A program made the translations under genes and the position numbers. Positions 52,877-63,756 of a stretch of DNA of 64,000 nucleotides are shown here, in pieces. Positions within the stretch are counted from its first letter, which is position 1. Every line of letters starts with the position of its first letter. A model generated the notes under the pieces. It was not told where the DNA came from and made no database searches. It worked only from the letters and a program-made list of their open reading frames with translations. Where the stretch lies: the sequence record OK905446.1; one strand, given 5' to 3'.

Positions 52877-53140
52877 ATGTCACAACAAACTCCAGAACAA
52901 GTAATCGAGCAGAAAGAAGCAGTAATCAAAGATCTTAAAGTTCGTACCTTTGACCTACAAGAAGCTCTTCAAGCTGAACGTAACTCATTCGGTCAATTCG
53001 TAGGTGTACTAGCGCAACTACTAGATTTCGATCAAGAAAAAGCAAGTTCTCTTCAGAACTACGTTGACGAAATCGCTTACCTAACTGGCAAAGCTGAACG
53101 ACCTGTTGAGGTCGAAGCTGTAGAAGAAGAAGCTGAATAA
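52877..53140 (+). CDS. gp57A: tail fibre chaperone
   Basis: Short acidic coiled coil LKVRTFD; synteny gp1-57A-57B. Confidence 0.75.
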   Translation: MSQQTPEQVIEQKEAVIKDLKVRTFDLQEALQAERNSFGQFVGVLAQLLDFDQEKASSLQNYVDEIAYLTGKAERPVEVEAVEEEAE

Positions 53141-53595
53141 TGAAACTATCTAAGTTCCTTGAGAGTCAGGGAACTTACGTTGGTATCAGATTAGACGAAG
53201 CGAGTAAGCAAGAGCTTGTTCGATTGCAACAAACGCTTCGTTTAAAAAATCCGTTAGATCCAGATAAATTTCACGTGACTGTGCTTTATAGTCGTAAGCA
53301 AATTGATGTGCCTGTAGTAGATACCACTTTCGTTGCCACTGTCGAACAAATTGACTGTTGGAAAACGCAAGACGGTAAGCACGCTGTCGTTGCTAAGATG
53401 TCATGTCCTGCTCTTGTAGCGCGTCACGAAGACCTTATCTCTATCGGTGGTACTCACGACTACCCTGACTATCAACCGCACGTCACGTTATCGTATGACG
53501 ACGCTATCACACCGATGTCCGTTAACACTGAAGTTCGTCTTGTTAATGAATATCTCGAACCACTAGACCTAGATTGGGTTGAAAATAATGACTGA
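53140..53595 (+). CDS. acb1: 2H phosphodiesterase, gp57B/Acb1 anti-CBASS family
   Basis: Two HxT motifs (FHVTVLYSR, PHVTLSYD), GTYV, THDYPDYQPH, EPLDLDW. Confidence 0.88.
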   Translation: MKLSKFLESQGTYVGIRLDEASKQELVRLQQTLRLKNPLDPDKFHVTVLYSRKQIDVPVVDTTFVATVEQIDCWKTQDGKHAVVAKMSCPALVARHEDLISIGGTHDYPDYQPHVTLSYDDAITPMSVNTEVRLVNEYLEPLDLDWVENND

Positions 53596-53842
53596 CTTAT
53601 CTACTGAAGCAGTACTGCGAAAGTATCAAGAAGACCCTGAATCACTGAACTCCGATGAAAACGTCGTTCTATTGACGTACGTAGTTGGTTTGCAGACCGA
53701 TCAGATTACTTTGCTTAAAGAGAACAACAAACTTTACGACAAAGCTATTCTTGAGCTTCAACAAGCAGTTTCGCAACTTCAAATCAAGCACGCTGCGCTT
53801 GAACGAGGCGAGACTGAAAGCGGTATTATCATCTCCGCTTAA
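53588..53842 (+). CDS. hypothetical coiled-coil protein
   Basis: ORF overlapping gp57B stop; heptad pattern. Confidence 0.65.
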   Translation: MTDLSTEAVLRKYQEDPESLNSDENVVLLTYVVGLQTDQITLLKENNKLYDKAILELQQAVSQLQIKHAALERGETESGIIISA

Positions 53843-53859
53843 AAACTTTAAAAAAGTTG

Positions 53860-53981
53860 TTGACTTCATCTGAAAAGGATGTAGAATGTATTTCATCGAG
53901 TCGAGAGACAGAAAACAAAATCTTAACTCGATGAAATACTTGAAAAAAAGATGTTGACTTTCGCTGAAAAGCTGATAAGAT
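53860..53981 (+). promoter_or_regulatory. tandem sigma70 promoters with A-tract UP elements
   Basis: TTGACT-16-TAGAAT (53860-53887) and TTGACT-16-TAAGAT (53954-53981). Confidence 0.75.
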
Positions 53982-53989
53982 TAACACAG

Positions 53990-54097
53990 TTGATTAAGCG
54001 AGCTAGAGTTCATCGTTCTCGCCTCTTCATTGAAGATGAACAACTTGATTAAACAGACTAGACTCATCGTTTCTGTCTCTTTGCTGAAGATGAGTAA
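53990..54097 (+). ncRNA. two tandem 53-55 nt H-type pseudoknot repeats
   Basis: Direct repeats with compensatory changes in both stems. Confidence 0.7.
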
Positions 54098-54247
54098 TAT
54101 TTTAAATGTGCGCTAGCCGCAATGAATACATAGGGGCAGTTAAGTTCTGCTGAGCAGCGAGAAGTCTTAGCGGACTAACTCACGAACAAAAACTAGCTGA
54201 GTTAAAATTCGCTCAGTCGGCGTGCAAGTAGCGCACATTTAAAATAT
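54097..54247 (+). ncRNA. structured RNA closed by perfect 19-bp stem
   Basis: ATATTTTAAATGTGCGCTA (54097-54115) pairs with 54229-54247. Confidence 0.55.
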
Positions 54248-54262
54248 CGAGAGTACATTGGT

Positions 54263-54385
54263 CGAGTGTTGGTGTAGTGGCAGCACACGTAGCATACTGT
54301 AATCAGACATGATTATATTCAGCAACCAATTTACGCATATCATAGGGAGATCGTGGGAACAGTTCGATTCTGTTACACTCGACCA
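54263..54385 (+). tRNA. interrupted tRNA-Pro(AGG)-like gene, 49-nt insert at 28/29
   Basis: C1:G72, A73, CCA, D and T arms; removing 54290-54338 restores CGATC/GATCG stem with loop ATAGGGA. Confidence 0.7.
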
Positions 54386-54418
54386 ATGTCCTCTCACTAA
54401 CAAAGCGAGGTGAGCAAT

Positions 54419-54574
54419 TTGATTGTCTATCTTCTCGCACTAGTATTCATAGTTCTATTTGCCTTGGACATTGAAGAAGAAAAGGTGCGTAATCATACTT
54501 TTACGCTAATCACATGCGAACGGGTCATTAATCCCGTAATTAAAGCGCACGATATTGGGTTGTGTTGTGATTAG
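54419..54574 (+). CDS. possible 51-aa membrane peptide (TTG start)
   Basis: GAGGTG RBS; MIVYLLALVFIVLFALDIEEEK... Confidence 0.35.
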   Translation: MIVYLLALVFIVLFALDIEEEKVRNHTFTLITCERVINPVIKAHDIGLCCD

Positions 54575-54657
54575 CTAAGGCAATATAAAACAAGGATTAC
54601 TGGTTCTTGCGTAGGGAATTACCGTTAGGTCTGCGCAAGAACTCGAAAACATATTGA

Positions 54658-54782
54658 TGCGGGTTGGTGTAGTGGTTAGCACACGTAGCAAAAAAACTGA
54701 TTCTGATAAGAATCTGTACGGCAATCAATTCGCATATCATTCATAAGATCGTGACGCAGGTTCGAATCCTGCACCCGCATCA
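54658..54782 (+). tRNA. interrupted tRNA-Met(CAU)-like gene, 50-nt insert at 28/29
   Basis: TGCGGGT/ACCCGCA acceptor, D and T arms; removing 54686-54735 gives CGATC/GATCG stem with 8-nt loop ATTCATAA; no encoded CCA. Confidence 0.6.
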
Positions 54783-54797
54783 ATATGTTTTTACAAC

Positions 54798-54918
54798 GGA
54801 GAGTTAGCTCAGTCTGGTAGAGCAAAAGAATGTTAAAGAATTCTGATAAGCATTCATGCTGCAAACCCTAACTAGGTAAATCTTTTTGTCGGTGGTTCAA
54901 ATCCACCACTCTCCACCA
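54798..54918 (+). ncRNA. tRNA-shaped RNA with 51-nt anticodon loop
   Basis: GGAGAGT/ACTCTCC-A-CCA, canonical D and T arms, AAAGA/TCTTT stem enclosing hairpin + CTGCAAA. Confidence 0.7.
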
Positions 54919-54931
54919 CTTTCGAGGTTTT

Positions 54932-55300
54932 ATGAATAAGTTTGATGACATAAACGACGAGCTAGATTGTATTTTGCATCGTTGTGAGATTGTAAAGCGC
55001 AATCTTAGAAAATATTGCTCATTCGCTGTTGAAATGCAGTATCGACTTATGATAAACTTCATCGGCATGGGTTGCTATCAACAAGTACTGCCTGTGTTAG
55101 ATAATCTCAACTATCACCCTGACACTAGTCAGCTTGATTGCCTAGAGATTAGACGGACGATTAAAGAATTGTTGCTCTGTGCAGATAAACTTGATTTTCT
55201 ACACCAACAAGACATGTTTCATCAAGTGAAGACATCTGCGCTTATAGCAGAAGAAGCAAACATCTTTGCTGCCAAAGTAGGTCGATTTCTTGAGAGATAA
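54932..55300 (+). CDS. hypothetical protein, 122 aa
   Basis: GAGGT RBS; fills the space between RNA genes. Confidence 0.65.
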   Translation: MNKFDDINDELDCILHRCEIVKRNLRKYCSFAVEMQYRLMINFIGMGCYQQVLPVLDNLNYHPDTSQLDCLEIRRTIKELLLCADKLDFLHQQDMFHQVKTSALIAEEANIFAAKVGRFLER

Positions 55301-55301
55301 T

Positions 55302-55379
55302 GGCCCGTTAGCTTAACTGGTAAAAGCAGTCGGCTCATAACCGAAAGATAGTTGGGTTCGAGTCCCACGCGGGTCACCA
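55302..55379 (+). tRNA. tRNA with CAU anticodon (Ile2 or elongator Met)
   Basis: Cloverleaf, loop CTCATAA, CCA; GGCCC acceptor resembles Ile2 type. Confidence 0.85.
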
Positions 55380-55401
55380 GTTAAAATAATGAAAAAAGTT
55401 C

Positions 55402-55430
55402 TTGACTTTGTTTTCGTGTAAGCCGATAAT
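55402..55430 (+). promoter_or_regulatory. sigma70-type promoter
   Basis: A-tract, TTGACT-17-GATAAT. Confidence 0.65.
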
Positions 55431-55464
55431 ACTTACATCGAAACGAAACATAGAAGAGAACATT

Positions 55465-55704
55465 ATGACTGACACTAAAATCAAAGCAACTGTTACTTTT
55501 GAGAGCCGTTCTGGTAAAATCATCGAACAGTTTGGTTACGGTGATACTCGCGAAGAAGCATTGAAATACGCTTCTCGTAAGGGTTTTGAAAACATCACTG
55601 TTCGTTTTGAAAACGAGACTTTTGAAGATGTCATTGATACTCGTACTGAAGATGAAATCAAAGCTGAACATACAGCGTGGGCTAAACTTCATTACGGCAA
55701 ATAA
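55465..55704 (+). CDS. hypothetical early protein, 79 aa
   Basis: Start at MTDTKIK after GAGAAC-ATTATG. Confidence 0.7.
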   Translation: MTDTKIKATVTFESRSGKIIEQFGYGDTREEALKYASRKGFENITVRFENETFEDVIDTRTEDEIKAEHTAWAKLHYGK

Positions 55705-55707
55705 TTA

Positions 55708-55947
55708 TGGCGGGGCTAGGTGCTCTGTGTGCAGTGTATGCCGAACATTAGTATAGTCGCAGACTCGCTATCTACGACGGTGCTGAATCACTCGGACTTG
55801 TCGAGAAAAAACATGTGAGAGGTCGAACTCTCATGTGTTGAAATAAAGACAATGAATTTGATATGCTGATAGGCTCTTACTTCGAAACTCTTATCGGGTT
55901 GACGATGTGTTGCGCCAGTAGGGAGTTCGATTCTCCCACCCGTCCAC
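55708..55947 (+). ncRNA. about 240-nt RNA with tRNA-like acceptor/T arm (tmRNA-like features)
   Basis: GGCGGG/CCCGTC stem, T arm GGGAG-TTCGATT-CTCCC, internal hairpins. Confidence 0.55.
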
Positions 55948-55957
55948 GGAGAATATT

Positions 55958-56167
55958 ATGGGTAAAACGTATACTGATATTGCTAAACGCTATCAGCGCA
56001 AAGGTGAAGATATTCCGCATTGGCTTGCCAAAAAGCTGAAGCAAGGTCAACATGGTGTTTGTGCTGGGTTTCGATGGGGTAATTCTCGTAGAAGCAAATC
56101 GCGTGATAGGCAAATGTTCAGTCAAATCGAACGCAGTCAGTTGAAGCGTAAGAGAGGTATGATATGA
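55958..56167 (+). CDS. small basic hypothetical protein
   Basis: GGAGA RBS; 69 aa Lys/Arg-rich. Confidence 0.65.
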   Translation: MGKTYTDIAKRYQRKGEDIPHWLAKKLKQGQHGVCAGFRWGNSRRSKSRDRQMFSQIERSQLKRKRGMI

Positions 56168-56688
56168 ATGTTCCGTTGAAATTTGCTCAAGCGTTCTCAA
56201 AAGAAGAGCGTGCCGCAATGTCACCTGAAGAACGTTCGAGACTTCGCTCGATATACAACAACAAGTACAATGACTATATTGAAAAGTATGTCAACGTGTA
56301 CACACGCAAAGATTTTCGACGTGAGCGTTGTTGGGTTATCCTAGCTCGTTGTAAAAAGACGGGTAAGATCATGGGTGAGATTGAGAACAGTTTCAACATG
56401 GGATGGTCGACTGAACGTGTTCGAGTAATTCGTCCGTATCTTGGGTATGACTTTCAAGCTTCTAAACGCTTCTCTAAAGCAGCGTACAATAAAGCTTGTT
56501 CAGACTATATCGCTAACTACGATAAGCGCGTAAAAGAGCTTAGAGAGCGATACAGCAACACTCACGACGTGTTTATCGCTCGTGTGGGTAGTCAGACTTG
56601 TCCGATTTCAATTGATTGGGATACGTTCTACAAAGAAAAGAACAAACGCAACTTTGAATGGCGAAATTTGAAGTTCAAAGTTAAATAA
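56164..56688 (+). CDS. hypothetical protein, 174 aa
   Basis: ATGA overlap with upstream ORF; GAGG RBS. Confidence 0.7.
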   Translation: MNVPLKFAQAFSKEERAAMSPEERSRLRSIYNNKYNDYIEKYVNVYTRKDFRRERCWVILARCKKTGKIMGEIENSFNMGWSTERVRVIRPYLGYDFQASKRFSKAAYNKACSDYIANYDKRVKELRERYSNTHDVFIARVGSQTCPISIDWDTFYKEKNKRNFEWRNLKFKVK

Positions 56689-56693
56689 TTTAC

Positions 56694-56809
56694 AGTCGGG
56701 TAGCTCAGTGGTAGAGCACGAAGAATGATACTGTCAAGTATCGCTCCAGCACTCTTTCAATTGCCTGTTAAGCACGTGGTCGCTGGTTCGAATCCAGCCC
56801 CGACTGCCA
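56694..56809 (+). tRNA. interrupted tRNA-Asn(GUU), 41-nt insert at 28/29
   Basis: Removing 56721-56761 gives perfect cloverleaf CGTGC-CTGTTAA-GCACG, G73, CCA. Confidence 0.8.
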
Positions 56810-56834
56810 TTTTCAAAACATAGTGAGGTACAAC

Positions 56835-57068
56835 ATGAGTAATTTCAATATCAATAAAACATTGCTTACTCCGAAACAACTGCGCGGTCTGTCAGACGAG
56901 CGTCTTAATGAATATCGCAAATCGTTTCGTAAACCTCTTGGCTTCTTGAAGCATCTGAATGACACGAATGAGTTGACTGAAGATCAGCACAAGAAGTTTG
57001 TACAGCTTAACAAGCATTACAACGATGAAATTCTAGTTGAAATGAATAAGCGAAAACACCTAGGCTGA
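56835..57068 (+). CDS. hypothetical protein, 77 aa
   Basis: GAGGT RBS before MSNFNINK. Confidence 0.65.
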   Translation: MSNFNINKTLLTPKQLRGLSDERLNEYRKSFRKPLGFLKHLNDTNELTEDQHKKFVQLNKHYNDEILVEMNKRKHLG

Positions 57069-57342
57069 TAGAAAGATCGCAGAAAGTTGAAATTTTTTTC
57101 AATTTTCTGCGAAAATACCGCAAATCGTCAAAATTGGTGTTATAAGTACTATTATACAAACAAAAACAATTTTTATTTTTTGCAAGAGAGCATTCAATGA
57201 CACATTCGATTACACATTCATCTGAGACATTACGCAGCGATTTTCTGCGCTCAGAATTCGTGTATCTAGCGAATCCGTGTGCAAAACAAAACTGGGATTC
57301 CCTCTTGTAGTCCGATAGTATAACATAGAAGTATACTTGAGG

Positions 57343-57365
57343 ACGCAAATAGCGTCCTTTTTTTA
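57343..57365 (+). terminator. intrinsic terminator
   Basis: AGGACGC-aaata-GCGTCCTTTTTTT. Confidence 0.8.
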
Positions 57366-57450
57366 TTATCTGAAGAAAAAGAAAATAATTTGAAAATTTT
57401 GTTTATCGTACTTTGATTGCAGAGTATCATAAACAAAGTTAAAGAACAAA

Positions 57451-59670: not shown

Positions 59671-59730
59671 AGTAATCTTACAGCAAACAATACAAAACTT
59701 TTATTTGGAAAAAGCAAAAAGGATTACTGT
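59671..59730 (+). ncRNA. ACAGCAA-family RNA with anticodon-stem-loop-like cargo
   Basis: AGTAATCT/GGATTACT stem, TACAGCAAAC, hairpin CTTTT-ATTTGGA-AAAAG. Confidence 0.6.
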
Positions 59731-60576: not shown

Positions 60577-60650
60577 GGGCCGTTAGCTTAATGGGAAAGC
60601 GCCTCACTTGCAATGAGGAAGATAGGGTTCGACTCCCTGCGTGTCCACCA
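60577..60650 (+). tRNA. tRNA-Ala(UGC)
   Basis: G3:U70, loop CTTGCAA, CCA; irregular acceptor. Confidence 0.8.
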
Positions 60651-60802: not shown

Positions 60803-60864
60803 AATTTAAGCTCTATCATGCGGCGAATGATACTTGCTTCGGCATATCACGAGCATGGTTTGAG

Positions 60865-61081
60865 AGACAATATACAGCAACAAATTAAAATTACTTAAAA
60901 AGAAGTGATGATCTTCACCTGGGCAGTGCTTCGGCGCAGCTTGAAAGGAAAGATTCTCTCTGCCTAGAAATAGTCAGATAGGCGCGTCGCTGAAACAGAC
61001 GATATTTGCTTGTTGTGAATAACAAGATAGTCAACTCCGATTCATGTCAAAGACGAAAAAACACTTCGGTATTGTCTGTAC
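60865..61081 (+). ncRNA. ACAGCAA-family RNA with about 190-nt multi-hairpin cargo
   Basis: AGACAATA/TATTGTCT stem, TACAGCAAC, 3' CTGTAC. Confidence 0.6.
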
Positions 61082-63492: not shown

Positions 63493-63503
63493 AATTCGCA
63501 ATA

Positions 63504-63756
63504 AGACATTGTACAGCAACTATTACTAATCAAAGAAGCAAACTTTAATAGTAATGAGGCGCACTAGCTGCTTTCTCAGTGATGACGTGAGCCCGGCGCA
63601 TTCTCGTGGTAGGAAATGGCCATTAAGACGGTGTTCGTACTGTTAAACGAAATAGGTCTCATGCCGAATCATGGGTATTCTCTTGATGAGAAACATCGAG
63701 ATAGTCAATTGAGATTTAAGGAAAAGACGATAAAACAATTCTCGAATGTCTGTGTA
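63504..63756 (+). ncRNA. ACAGCAA-family RNA with about 225-nt cargo
   Basis: AGACATT/AATGTCT stem, GTACAGCAAC, 3' CTGTG. Confidence 0.6.

What the first reader, a model, noticed from the sequence alone, without database searches (positions are those of the whole stretch)
54263..56809. Three tRNA genes interrupted at the same position (28/29) by related 41-50 nt inserts: candidate new tRNA intron class or decoy tRNAs
Seen: removing 56721-56761 gives a perfect tRNA-Asn(GUU) with G73. Removing 54290-54338 gives a tRNA-Pro with C1:G72, A73, G37 and anticodon AGG. Removing 54686-54735 gives a CAU tRNA with an initiator-like acceptor and one extra loop base. All inserts start after the CG of the anticodon stem and contain a 5-bp hairpin with a 6-nt loop, then C(A/G)GCA, then CAAT. 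The first two share TAGCA...CGCAT ends and a covarying CTG/C(A/G)G pair. Established: known bacterial tRNA introns are large self-splicing introns in the anticodon loop, and short non-canonical-position introns are archaeal. T4 has tRNA-cluster RNAs of unknown function (RnaC/RnaD) that may be related. Inference: either protein-spliced introns (phage RNA ligase/Pnk) or unspliced tRNA mimics that trap anticodon nucleases or tRNA-sensing defences.
Basis: partly seen in the sequence, partly recalled or inferred. Interest (0 to 1): 0.9.

Follow-up and report, generated by a model that had tools for sequence, protein, structure and literature searches.

The report
Ro-protein RNA module inside phage tRNAs
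Four tRNA-like genes of this KVP40-like Vibrio phage carry, in the anticodon arm, a conserved hairpin-plus-(A)C(A)GCAA RNA module that in many unrelated phages lies next to the gene for a Ro60-like RNA-binding protein. They therefore look like phage 'Y RNAs' built on a tRNA frame, not broken genes, and are not proven to be introns.

Summary
The window (Vibrio phage VS1, KVP40-like) holds four interrupted tRNA-like genes, not three, and relatives hold five paralogous families. KVP40's record has called them 'tRNA-Pseudo' since 2003.

The inserts are as conserved as the tRNA parts. All share one module: a 7-bp hairpin with a tetraloop (strong covariation), about 2 nt, then NCNGCAA (ACAGCAA in other phages).

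The same module interrupts tRNAs of many anticodons, mostly at 28/29 or 29/30, in more than 100 IMG/VR contigs. In circularly permuted form it flanks the gene for a DUF2828+vWA protein in 9 of 10 phage loci chosen by that protein alone (29 ACAGCAA on the gene strand, 1 opposite, 4.8 expected). An AlphaFold model of that protein matches Ro60 over its full length. VS1 encodes it 2.9 kb past the window end.

Best reading: the inserts are the RNA element that partners phage Ro60-like proteins, and the interrupted tRNAs are Y-RNA analogues in normal tRNA topology.

Excision to give working tRNAs is not excluded. E and D, and many examples in other phages, would make perfect tRNAs. A, B and C evolve unlike decoding tRNAs.

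No Rfam family or paper describes the module. A link to T4 RnaC/RnaD is not supported.

The parts
54249..54395 (+). Element A. A tRNA-like gene (body 54263-54385; excised form reads as Pro, anticodon AGG) on a 21-bp terminal stem made of leader 54249-54262 plus acceptor, paired with 54375-54395.
   Evidence: aragorn -i; excised form called Pro(AGG). The stem is read from the sequence and covaries in F86/K566/D482. Present in all 13 KVP40-like loci examined and in F86, K566 and D482.
54290..54338 (+). Insert of A, between tRNA positions 28 and 29. Hairpin P2 54299-54316 (GUAAUCA-GACA-UGAUUAU), spacer AU, motif UCAGCAA 54319-54325.
   Evidence: Model R1 hit 54296-54329, 26.0 bits. Leave-out model R2 ranks it 3rd in the window, 13.9 bits. 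Mean pairwise identity of the insert 0.997.
54650..54787 (+). Element B. A tRNA-like gene (body 54658-54781) with an 8-nt 'anticodon' loop AUUCAUAA and no CCA, on a 15-bp terminal stem (54650-54664 paired with 54773-54787), followed by a T run.
   Evidence: aragorn -i; excised form has a 4-base anticodon. The loop differs between orthologues: AUUCAUAA, AUUUCCAA, AUUCUAA, CUUCAAA.
54686..54735 (+). Insert of B at 28/29. P2 54698-54715 (UGAUUCU-GAUA-AGAAUCU), spacer GU, motif ACGGCAA 54718-54724.
   Evidence: R1 27.5 bits. Leave-out R2 ranks it 1st in the window, 15.6 bits.
54798..54918 (+). A tRNA-like gene with an intact anticodon stem (AAAGA 54825-54829 / UCUUU 54881-54885), GUU kept in all orthologues, A73 and an encoded CCA.
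   Evidence: Rfam tRNA 55.8 bits; aragorn -i; excised form called Asn(GUU). KVP40 annotates it tRNA-Pseudo-4.
54836..54879 (+). Insert of D, in or after the anticodon loop (boundary ambiguous by 1-2 nt because of repeated A). P2 54838-54855, spacer AU, motif GCUGCAA 54858-54864.
   Evidence: R1 22.4 bits; not found by leave-out R2. The stem covaries: GAAUAU/GUAUUC in K566, GUAUUC/GAAUGC in 1.081.O.
56694..56809 (+). Element E. The excised form is a canonical tRNA-Asn(GUU) with G73 and an encoded CCA.
   Evidence: Rfam tRNA 48.4 bits; ARAGORN on the excised form. KVP40 annotates it tRNA-Pseudo-3. Present in all 13 KVP40-like loci and in K566/D482.
56721..56761 (+). Insert of E at 28/29. Possible closing helix AAGA 56721-56724 / UCUU 56753-56756, P2 56726-56743 (UGAUACU-GUCA-AGUAUCG), spacer CU, motif CCAGCAC 56746-56752.
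   Evidence: R1 26.3 bits. R2 ranks it 5th, 12.0 bits. AAGA/UCUU becomes AAAU/AUUU in K566, but a closing helix is not supported statistically across phages.
59671..59728 (+). Free-standing, circularly permuted copy of the module between tRNA-Trp and tRNA-Asn: helix AGUAAUCU/GGAUUACU enclosing U-ACAGCAA (59680-59686) plus 34 nt.
   Evidence: Exact motif with a perfect 7-bp enclosing helix; MFE fold. Same layout as beside Ro60-like genes in P100, Alf5, S-CoN_Ph16 and CP30A.
63505..63635 (+). Second free-standing ACAGCAA unit (motif 63513-63519), directly after tRNA-Ser(GCU), between a long-range helix and a hairpin. Weaker case.
   Evidence: Exact motif; MFE fold; weak R1/R2 hits at 63500-63523.
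60862..60960 (+). Possible third free-standing unit (ACAGCAA 60874-60880), with a longer spacer and a GAGAG/CUCUC closing helix. Doubtful.
   Evidence: Exact motif; MFE fold.

Best explanation
The inserts are copies of a conserved RNA module: a 7-bp hairpin, about 2 nt, then (A)C(A)GCAA. This module is the cognate RNA element of phage Ro60-like proteins (DUF2828 + vWA/MIDAS).

The four interrupted genes are therefore tRNA-framed analogues of Y RNAs. The tRNA body (acceptor, D and T arms) is kept, and the protein-binding module is grafted into the anticodon arm. Bacterial YrlA Y RNAs show the same arrangement in circularly permuted form.

The phage's Ro60-like gene lies 2.9 kb beyond the window end. 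The resulting RNP most likely acts in RNA surveillance or repair, or in counter-defence, during infection.

Shown: the module, its covariation, its spread across phages, its genomic coupling to the Ro60-like gene, and the Ro60 fold of that protein.

Inferred: physical binding, that A-D act unspliced, and the physiological role.
For: 1. All four inserts, and family C in relatives, share hairpin + NN + NCNGCAA. The hairpin covaries strongly.

81 of 145 matches lie in sequences with acceptor, D and T arms. 38 give a perfect 5-bp stem and 7-nt loop (U33, R37) after removal of one insert, mostly at 28/29 or 29/30.

3. The commonest neighbouring ORF is a DUF2828+DUF7788 protein. It is present in 34 of the 118 scan loci, plus 7 loci from an earlier scan. 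It is also beside 11 matches in genome and MAG contigs.

4. Unbiased test: 10 loci from diverse phages were chosen only for holding that protein gene. They have 29 ACAGCAA on the gene strand, 1 on the opposite strand and 4.8 +/- 2.1 in shuffles. 21 of the 29 have a perfect 7-bp enclosing helix, against 22% of random positions.

5. The AF2 model of the protein (pLDDT 91.8) matches Ro60 structures over its full length; the top 12 hits have E from 1e-5 to 3e-8 and TM up to 0.60.

6. KVP40 and 55 other Vibrio phage records encode it. VS1 has it at window-equivalent 66,910-68,343, with an ACAGCAA 28 nt before the start codon. Free-standing units lie in the window's own tRNA cluster.

7. A, B, C and D do not evolve like decoding tRNAs. 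Their loops change (AUAGGGA/AUUAGGA; 8-nt loops; U33C in K566 D). C has no usable loop. A and B have long terminal stems, and B has no CCA.

8. Precedent: phage Ro60 binds Y-like RNAs encoded beside its gene and also binds host PNPase (PMC12135203). Bacterial YrlA Y RNAs mimic tRNA (PMC4201824). The Ro60-like gp130 of Bas63 counters the ppl defence, and its authors guessed that some neighbouring 'tRNAs' are Y RNAs (bioRxiv 10.1101/2024.10.10.617714).
Against: - No binding or expression data exist for these RNAs.
- The KVP40-like motifs are degenerate (UCAGCAA, ACGGCAA, GCUGCAA, CCAGCAC).
- A model built only from unrelated phages finds B, A and E at ranks 1, 3 and 5 in the window, but with marginal E-values (0.12-1), and it misses D.
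- In KVP40-like phages the Ro60-like gene is about 10 kb from the interrupted genes, not adjacent.
- Part of the association could arise because both features favour tRNA arrays. Breezona, P100, CP30A and S-CoN_Ph16 argue against this, since their units are not in tRNA arrays.
- In other phages 19 of 22 interrupted tRNAs have no uninterrupted gene with the same anticodon in the locus, and they look like ordinary working tRNAs. E would be a perfect tRNA-Asn. This favours excision for at least part of the class.
Confidence: 0.55

Rival explanations
1. The inserts are true introns of a new class. An unknown endonuclease or the RNA itself excises the insert, and a ligase (host RtcB or phage Rnl) joins the exons. 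This yields working tRNAs, and possibly a free or circular mini Y RNA that then binds the Ro60-like protein. This overlaps with, rather than excludes, the main explanation.
For: - In-silico excision gives canonical tRNAs: E and D become Asn(GUU), A becomes Pro(AGG) with C1:G72, A73 and G37.
- In other phages the interrupted genes cover many anticodons. Some have identity elements that match the anticodon: Gly UCC with U73, Pro UGG with G37/A73, Asn with G73.
- They are mostly non-redundant within the locus.
- The insertion point is strongly preferred, after C27-G28.
- Listeria phage P100 has RtcB ('tRNA splicing ligase') 1 kb from its Ro60-like gene.
Against: - No bulge-helix-bulge can be drawn at the junctions. 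This rests on manual inspection of D and of L034.
- There is no match to any intron or ribozyme family in Rfam.
- The same module occurs free-standing, where nothing needs splicing.
- A, B and C of KVP40-like phages could not decode after excision: 8-nt loops, no loop at all, no CCA, and anticodons that change between orthologues.
- E and D duplicate two normal tRNA-Asn genes in the window.
- No uninterrupted allele of the E-type anticodon arm exists in IMG/VR, against 11 interrupted copies.
Confidence: 0.3
2. The RNAs are decoys or sensors for tRNA-targeting defence nucleases. They are unspliced tRNA look-alikes whose exposed anticodon mini-hairpins soak up or report anticodon nucleases. The module only stabilises or marks them.
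For: - The anticodon mini-hairpin is kept as a 3-bp stem plus loop, and the stem covaries (AUC/GAU against GAA/UUC), while its loop sequence changes fast between A/B orthologues.
- The cluster lies beside the anti-CBASS gene acb1.
- A Ro60-like protein of a Felixounavirus is a counter-defence factor.
Against: - No defence system is known to be trapped this way.
- It does not explain why one sequence motif is conserved across phages of unrelated hosts, or why that motif tracks the Ro60-like gene.
- C and D have no separate anticodon hairpin.
Confidence: 0.1
3. The genes are decaying tRNA pseudogenes with meaningless insertions, which is the present database annotation.
For: KVP40, phi-pp2 and phiGrn1/phiST2 annotate or describe them as pseudo-forms.
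Against: - The inserts are conserved as well as or better than the flanks across phages that differ by 15-30% nearby.
- There are compensatory changes in the hairpin and in the terminal stems.
- The same module occurs in unrelated phages.
Confidence: 0.02
4. The module is a small self-cleaving or self-processing ribozyme or nuclease signal used to cut tRNA-array transcripts. Ro60-like genes simply share the neighbourhood.
For: An invariant 4-7 nt single-stranded motif beside a sequence-variable helix is typical of small ribozyme cores. Free-standing units sit between tRNAs in Alf5 and in this window.
Against: - No hit to hammerhead, twister, pistol, hatchet or HDV-like families.
- The units cluster at the Ro60-like gene even where there are no tRNA arrays (Breezona, CP30A, S-CoN_Ph16).
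Confidence: 0.05

Closest known systems
Bacterial YrlA-type Y RNAs with Ro60/Rsr (Chen et al. 2014, PMC4201824; Rfam RF02553)
   Same: A non-coding RNA encoded in the neighbourhood of a Ro60-fold protein gene. It combines a tRNA-like body (T arm, D arm, acceptor) with a protein-binding stem that takes the place of the anticodon arm.
   Different: - Topology is circularly permuted. Here the ends are at the acceptor stem and the module is closed by a tetraloop, whereas in YrlA the ends form the Ro-binding stem.
- The conserved motif is (A)C(A)GCAA, not the YrlA/Y RNA bulged helix.
- The Rfam YrlA model scores only 30 bits (gathering score 69), and only across the B/D junction.
- A, B and E keep an anticodon mini-hairpin.
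- The protein belongs to Pfam DUF2828, not the TROVE family as annotated.
phiRo60 with Yrl1/Yrl2 of Thermus phage phiLo (PMC12135203)
   Same: A phage-encoded Ro60 homologue with small RNAs encoded beside its gene. Its structures (9KOP, 9L5Y) are among the Foldseek matches of the DUF2828 model.
   Different: Yrl1/2 were defined by a CGAA motif in a stem-bulge-stem and are not tRNA-embedded. No ACAGCAA module or interrupted tRNA is described there.
'Enigmatic', highly conserved introns in tRNAs of Lak megaphages (Devoto et al., bioRxiv 10.1101/356790)
   Same: Oversized phage tRNA genes first scored as pseudo-tRNAs, with inserts conserved across genomes. A Lak phage record also gives a weak tblastn match to the Ro60-like protein (E 9e-9).
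   Different: The Lak inserts were not compared here. Their position and motif are unknown to me. That paper proposes no partner protein.
Archaeal non-canonical tRNA introns (bulge-helix-bulge, EndA plus RtcB)
   Same: Short (tens of nt) inserts at non-canonical positions, including the anticodon stem. The exons make canonical tRNAs.
   Different: No BHB motif can be drawn. No splicing endonuclease was identified. The host is a bacterium. The insert carries a conserved sequence motif that also occurs outside tRNAs.
Bacterial and phage group I introns in tRNA genes
   Same: They interrupt tRNA genes in bacteria and phages.
   Different: Group I introns are over 200 nt, lie in the anticodon loop and have a catalytic core. 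There is no Rfam group I hit here.
T4 stable RNAs RnaC and RnaD
   Same: Unexplained stable RNAs in a T4-type tRNA cluster, downstream of 57B. RnaC has a T-arm/acceptor-like 3' part.
   Different: No module hit at E<=1 with model R2 in the T4 region, and no sequence similarity seen.

Membership tests
Y RNA (RNA partner of a Ro60-fold protein) | Encoded near a gene for a Ro60/TROVE-fold protein | tested here: met
   A DUF2828+vWA gene lies within 0.1-0.5 kb of module-bearing RNAs in many loci. In VS1 it lies 2.9 kb past the window end, about 10 kb from elements A-E. The Ro60 fold is shown by AF2 plus Foldseek.
Y RNA (RNA partner of a Ro60-fold protein) | Binds the Ro60 protein in vivo or in vitro | not testable with these tools
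   Needs RIP/CLIP or EMSA.
Y RNA (RNA partner of a Ro60-fold protein) | Conserved helix with adjoining unpaired conserved nucleotides as the protein-binding site | tested here: inconclusive
   A covarying 7-bp helix plus an invariant GCA within NCNGCAA is present. Its sequence differs from the metazoan, YrlA and phiLo (CGAA) sites, and binding is only inferred.
Rfam YrlA (RF02553) | Reaches the family's gathering score (69 bits) | tested here: not met
   The only hit is 30 bits, spanning the 3' half of B and the 5' half of D. No YrlA hit at E<=0.01 in L149-L152 or four other loci.
tRNA (Rfam RF00005 / ARAGORN) | Cloverleaf scoring above threshold | tested here: met
   D scores 55.8 bits and E 48.4 bits, with the insert treated as an insertion. 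All four are called by aragorn -i and, after in-silico excision, by plain ARAGORN. B has an 8-nt loop.
Decoding tRNA (functional after excision) | Anticodon and 7-nt loop with U33 conserved among orthologues; free 3' end | tested here: not met
   Not met for A (AUAGGGA against AUUAGGA), B (8-nt and varying loops, no CCA, 15-bp terminal stem), C (no loop) and D in K566 (C33). Met for E.
Protein-spliced (archaeal/eukaryal type) tRNA intron | Bulge-helix-bulge motif at the exon-intron junctions | tested here: not met
   Manual inspection of D, and of L034 output: both junctions lie at the same end of the insert's arm, and no pair of 3-nt bulges is separated by 4 bp. No formal BHB scanner was available.
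Protein-spliced (archaeal/eukaryal type) tRNA intron | Spliced product and excised intron detectable | not testable with these tools
   Needs RNA data from infected cells.
Group I intron | Catalytic core (P3-P9), over 200 nt, Rfam Intron_gpI match | tested here: not met
   The inserts are 41-50 nt. No Rfam hit even at E<=1.
Known small self-cleaving ribozymes (hammerhead, twister, pistol, hatchet, HDV-like) | Match to the family covariance model | tested here: not met
   No hit at E<=1 in 53800-57400, nor at the gathering score in the window.
T4 RnaC/RnaD | Shared module or sequence | tested here: not met
   Model R2 gives no hit at E<=1 in L013. Rfam finds only weak noise.

The most novel reading that the evidence does not exclude
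The hairpin-ACAGCAA module defines a new class of tRNA intron in bacterial viruses. It is cut out of the anticodon stem (28/29) and the exons are rejoined by RtcB-type ligation. The released, possibly circular, insert is the Y RNA of the phage Ro60-like protein. That would be protein-dependent tRNA splicing in bacteria, tied to Ro60 biology.
Probability: 0.2. Interest if true: 0.95.

Novelty: new variant of a known kind. Interest (0 to 1): 0.78.

Why it matters
- It would turn genes filed for twenty years as 'pseudo-tRNAs' of KVP40-type phages, and probably the 'enigmatic introns' of other large phages, into a defined RNA class with a named protein partner.
- It gives phage Ro60-like proteins a sequence-defined RNA element that can be searched for and mutated. 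These proteins occur in 705 phage records here, and one is already shown to counter a bacterial defence.
- It offers a plausible evolutionary bridge between tRNAs and tRNA-mimicking Y RNAs.
- If the inserts prove to be excised, it would be the first short protein-dependent tRNA intron in the bacterial world, and would suggest natural substrates for bacterial RtcB.

Tried and rejected
- **T4 RnaC/RnaD homology.** Fetched the T4 region. No module hit.
- **gp57B as a splicing ligase or phosphoesterase.** It is Acb1.
- **Small neighbouring ORFs as processing enzymes** (54932-55300, 55465-55704, 55958-56167, 56164-56688, 56835-57068). They match only PHROGs of unknown function. The search for related loci with the 174-aa ORF found nothing.
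- **Recent duplication from the phage's own uninterrupted tRNAs.** No close paralogue.
- **Hammerhead idea** (CUGAUAAG against CUGAUGAG). Rejected: the loop varies and there is no Rfam hit.
- **'The hairpin loop is an anticodon loop'** (CUGAUAA, CUGUUAA and similar). Rejected: the closing pairs make it a tetraloop, and other phages have GUUU, GUCC and others.
- **Target-site duplication** (the TAGCAT...TAGCAT repeat in F86 A). Keeping one copy does not restore a tRNA.
- **A general closing helix between insert leader and tail.** Not better than shuffled A/U-rich tails (4.14 against 3.89 bp, p = 0.23).
- **An uninterrupted allele of E.** None in IMG/VR.
- **Sequence search of the Ro60-like protein against PDB.** It gave only designed repeat proteins. 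The fold search was needed.
- **Miller et al. 2003 (KVP40 genome paper) and the Sim et al. review.** Not held.
- **Literature searches.** None found a paper on the motif or on DUF2828 RNA partners.

Full report
**Identity of the window.** The region 54200-56850 is 100% identical to Vibrio phage VS1 and VS2. It is 83-95% identical to KVP40, nt-1, phi-pp2, ValKK3 and about 45 other Schizotequatrovirus/Mylasvirus records. KVP40's record annotates the homologues as tRNA-Pseudo-3, -4 and -5. phi-pp2 and phiGrn1/phiST2 annotate them as assorted intron-containing tRNAs or tRNA-OTHER. Their papers mention only 'pseudo-forms'.

**Checking the observation.**
- Plain ARAGORN finds 27 normal tRNAs in the window and none of the elements.
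- ARAGORN with intron search finds four: A 54263-54385, B 54658-54781, D 54798-54918 and E 56694-56809.
- Rfam's tRNA model reaches threshold for D (55.8 bits) and E (48.4 bits), with the insert as a long insertion.
Excising 54836-54879 from D gives Asn(GUU).
- A and B sit on 21-bp and 15-bp terminal stems formed by the acceptor stem plus leader-trailer pairing. These stems covary in F86, K566, D482 and 1.081.O. B lacks CCA.

**Conservation.**
- Thirteen KVP40-like loci and four divergent ones (F86, K566, D482, 1.081.O) show five paralogous families, A to E.
- C is absent from the window. QD01 has C where VS1 has D, and KVP40 has both.
- The inserts are conserved as well as the tRNA parts and better than the flanks (mean pairwise identity 0.83-0.997 against 0.70-0.93).
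- Loops of the 'anticodon' mini-hairpins of A and B change between orthologues: AUAGGGA/AUUAGGA; AUUCAUAA/AUUUCCAA/AUUCUAA/CUUCAAA.
- D in K566 has C33. C has no usable loop.
- Only E behaves like a decoding tRNA.

**The shared module.** All inserts contain a hairpin whose stem sequence differs freely but stays paired, capped by GAUA, GACA, GUCA, GUUA or similar. About 2 nt later comes NCNGCAA. On an alignment of 35 modules:
- 83.7% of the cells of the 7-bp helix are paired, against 52% in shuffles.
- The covariation score is 0.849 against 0.264 (0 of 500 shuffles as high), and 0.13-0.22 with slid partners.
- G-U pairs occur only in the tRNA sense, which points to an RNA-level structure.

A closing helix between insert leader and tail is suggested for E (AAGA/UCUU in VS1 becomes AAAU/AUUU in K566). 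It is not better than chance across phages.

**Spread beyond KVP40-like phages.**
- Exact-pattern scans of IMG/VR built on the flanks of E and of A/B found the same tRNA frames with other 51-55 nt inserts in unrelated contigs. All carried hairpin + ACAGCAA.
- Of 145 matches, 81 lie in sequences with acceptor, D and T arms.
- 38 give a perfect 5-bp anticodon stem and 7-nt loop with U33 and R37 after removal of one 28-87 nt insert.
- The position is mostly 28/29 or 29/30, after C27-G28.
- The anticodons are diverse: Asn, Thr, Ser, Val, Asp, Pro, Arg, Ile and others.
- In those phages the interrupted genes are mostly non-redundant within the locus and have no long terminal stems.

**Covariance models.**
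- A model from all modules finds exactly the four inserts as the top four hits in the window (27.5-22.4 bits; the next hit is 17.2).
- A model built only from unrelated phages ranks B, A and E 1st, 3rd and 5th, but with marginal E-values, and misses D. The KVP40-like copies are therefore divergent members.

**The partner protein.**
- Clustering the ORFs of module-bearing loci showed that the commonest neighbour is a roughly 480-500 aa protein with Pfam DUF2828 and DUF7788 (a vWA domain with a DxSGS MIDAS motif).
- It is present in 34 of the 118 scan loci, usually within a few hundred nt of the interrupted tRNA. It is also beside 11 matches in genome and MAG contigs.
- tblastn finds it in 705 phage records. 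These include KVP40 (KVP40.0300), 55 other Vibrio phage records, mycobacteriophages (annotated 'Ro-like RNA binding protein'), Listeria P100, Felixounavirus, Campylobacter, Enterococcus and Staphylococcus phages, and weakly Lak-B3.
- An AlphaFold2 model (pLDDT 91.8, pTM 0.91) matches Ro60 structures over its full length. The 12 best Foldseek hits are all Ro60, including Thermus phage phiLo Ro60.
- VS1 has the gene at window-equivalent 66,910-68,343, 94% identical to KVP40.0300.

**Unbiased test of the coupling.** Ten loci were chosen only because they hold the protein gene: KVP40, Breezona, P100, Alf5, CP30A, EfsSzw-1, S-CoN_Ph16, PK-3, RSP15 and Serratia BF.
- They contain 29 ACAGCAA on the gene strand and 1 on the other. 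Dinucleotide shuffles give 4.8 +/- 2.1, with a maximum of 11.
- 21 of the 29 have a perfect 7-bp helix. One strand ends 1-3 nt before the motif and its partner lies 23-104 nt after it. Random positions show this in 22% of cases. The sites without a helix include those inside the protein gene itself.
- This layout, helix strand-NN-ACAGCAA...helix strand, is the circular permutation of hairpin-NN-ACAGCAA. In Breezona and EfsSzw-1 the enclosed part contains a T arm, as in YrlA.
- The window's own tRNA cluster has such free-standing units at 59671-59728 and 63505-63635, and perhaps 60862-60960. One ACAGCAA lies 28 nt before the Ro60-like start codon in VS1 and KVP40.

**What is known.**
- Bacterial Y RNAs (YrlA) are encoded beside Ro60 and mimic tRNA (PMC4201824).
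- A Thermus phage Ro60 binds two Y-like RNAs encoded upstream of its gene, and binds host PNPase (PMC12135203).
- The Ro60-like gp130 of coliphage Bas63 counters the ppl defence. Its authors speculated that some adjacent 'tRNA genes' are Y RNAs.
- Lak megaphage tRNAs have unexplained conserved introns.
- None of these describes the ACAGCAA module or its insertion into tRNAs.
- Rfam 15 has no matching family, and the YrlA model does not reach threshold.

**Interpretation.** The best-supported reading is that the inserts are the RNA element partnered with the phage Ro60-like protein, and that the interrupted genes are Y-RNA analogues in normal tRNA topology.
- For A, B, C and D of KVP40-like phages, the way they evolve argues that they act unspliced.
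- For E, and for many interrupted tRNAs elsewhere, excision to a working tRNA cannot be excluded. It would make the module a new intron class whose product could be the Y RNA.
- No bulge-helix-bulge, group I core or known ribozyme is present. The neighbouring 'RNA ligase' gp57B is Acb1. T4 RnaC/RnaD lack the module.
- Binding, transcription and processing are all untested. The experiments that would decide are listed under decisive next steps.

Noticed in passing
window 55713-55950 (+): An odd element. It starts GGCGGGGCUAGG and ends GGGAG-UUCGAUU-CUCCC-ACCCGUC-CAC, that is, a T arm plus a 6-bp acceptor-like pairing (with G2-U) enclosing about 165 nt. ARAGORN does not call it as a tRNA or tmRNA, Rfam has no hit, and the module models do not hit it.
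   Followed up: partly
window 54103-54245 (+): About 140 nt closed by a perfect 12-bp long-range pairing (AAAUGUGCGCUA ... UAGCGCACAUUU), just upstream of element A. The 3' part is conserved in F86 and K566. Possibly another structured RNA. No Rfam hit.
   Followed up: no
window 53850-54100 (+): Two strong sigma-70-like promoters with A-rich upstream tracts (TTGACT...TAGAAT at about 53858-53890, TTGACT...GATAAGATT at about 53945-53980), followed by two tandem related hairpins (GTTCATC...GATGAAC and ACTCATC...GATGAGT). Read from the sequence only; they could drive the RNA cluster.
   Followed up: no
window 53140-53595 (+): The gene that several records call 'RNA ligase' (gp57B) is Acb1, the anti-CBASS cyclic-nucleotide phosphodiesterase (Pfam PF23474, 4e-46).
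   Followed up: yes
window 60577-60647 (+): A tRNA found by Rfam (46.3 bits) but not by ARAGORN. The loop CUUGCAA would read as anticodon UGC (Ala).
   Followed up: no
L149 4473-5003 (KVP40.0299): The gene immediately after the Ro60-like gene in KVP40 is an RNase H-like protein (Pfam PF04308, 6e-17). It is a candidate nuclease partner of the RNP.
   Followed up: partly
L151 (Listeria phage P100) 962-1513 and 4614-6500: Beside the Ro60-like gene and three ACAGCAA units lie a ROOL-like RNA (86 bits, below the gathering score of 99.1), an HD phosphohydrolase and an RtcB 'tRNA splicing ligase'.
   Followed up: no
L010 (TCU-VP03-AIR1) 1321-1974; L003 (QD01) 1399-1511: The B/C/D block is variable. 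In TCU-VP03 a homing endonuclease gene lies where relatives carry B, C and D, and none of the three was detected there. QD01 carries family C at the position where VS1 carries D.
   Followed up: no
L075 14095-14337 (-): A HEARO RNA (139 bits) in one of the contigs that carries several interrupted tRNAs and the Ro60-like gene.
   Followed up: no
L022 9677-9805 (-): An Asn-type tRNA frame with the same flanks as E, but with a 55-nt insert at 28/29 that lacks the hairpin-ACAGCAA module. The site can evidently hold other inserts.
   Followed up: no
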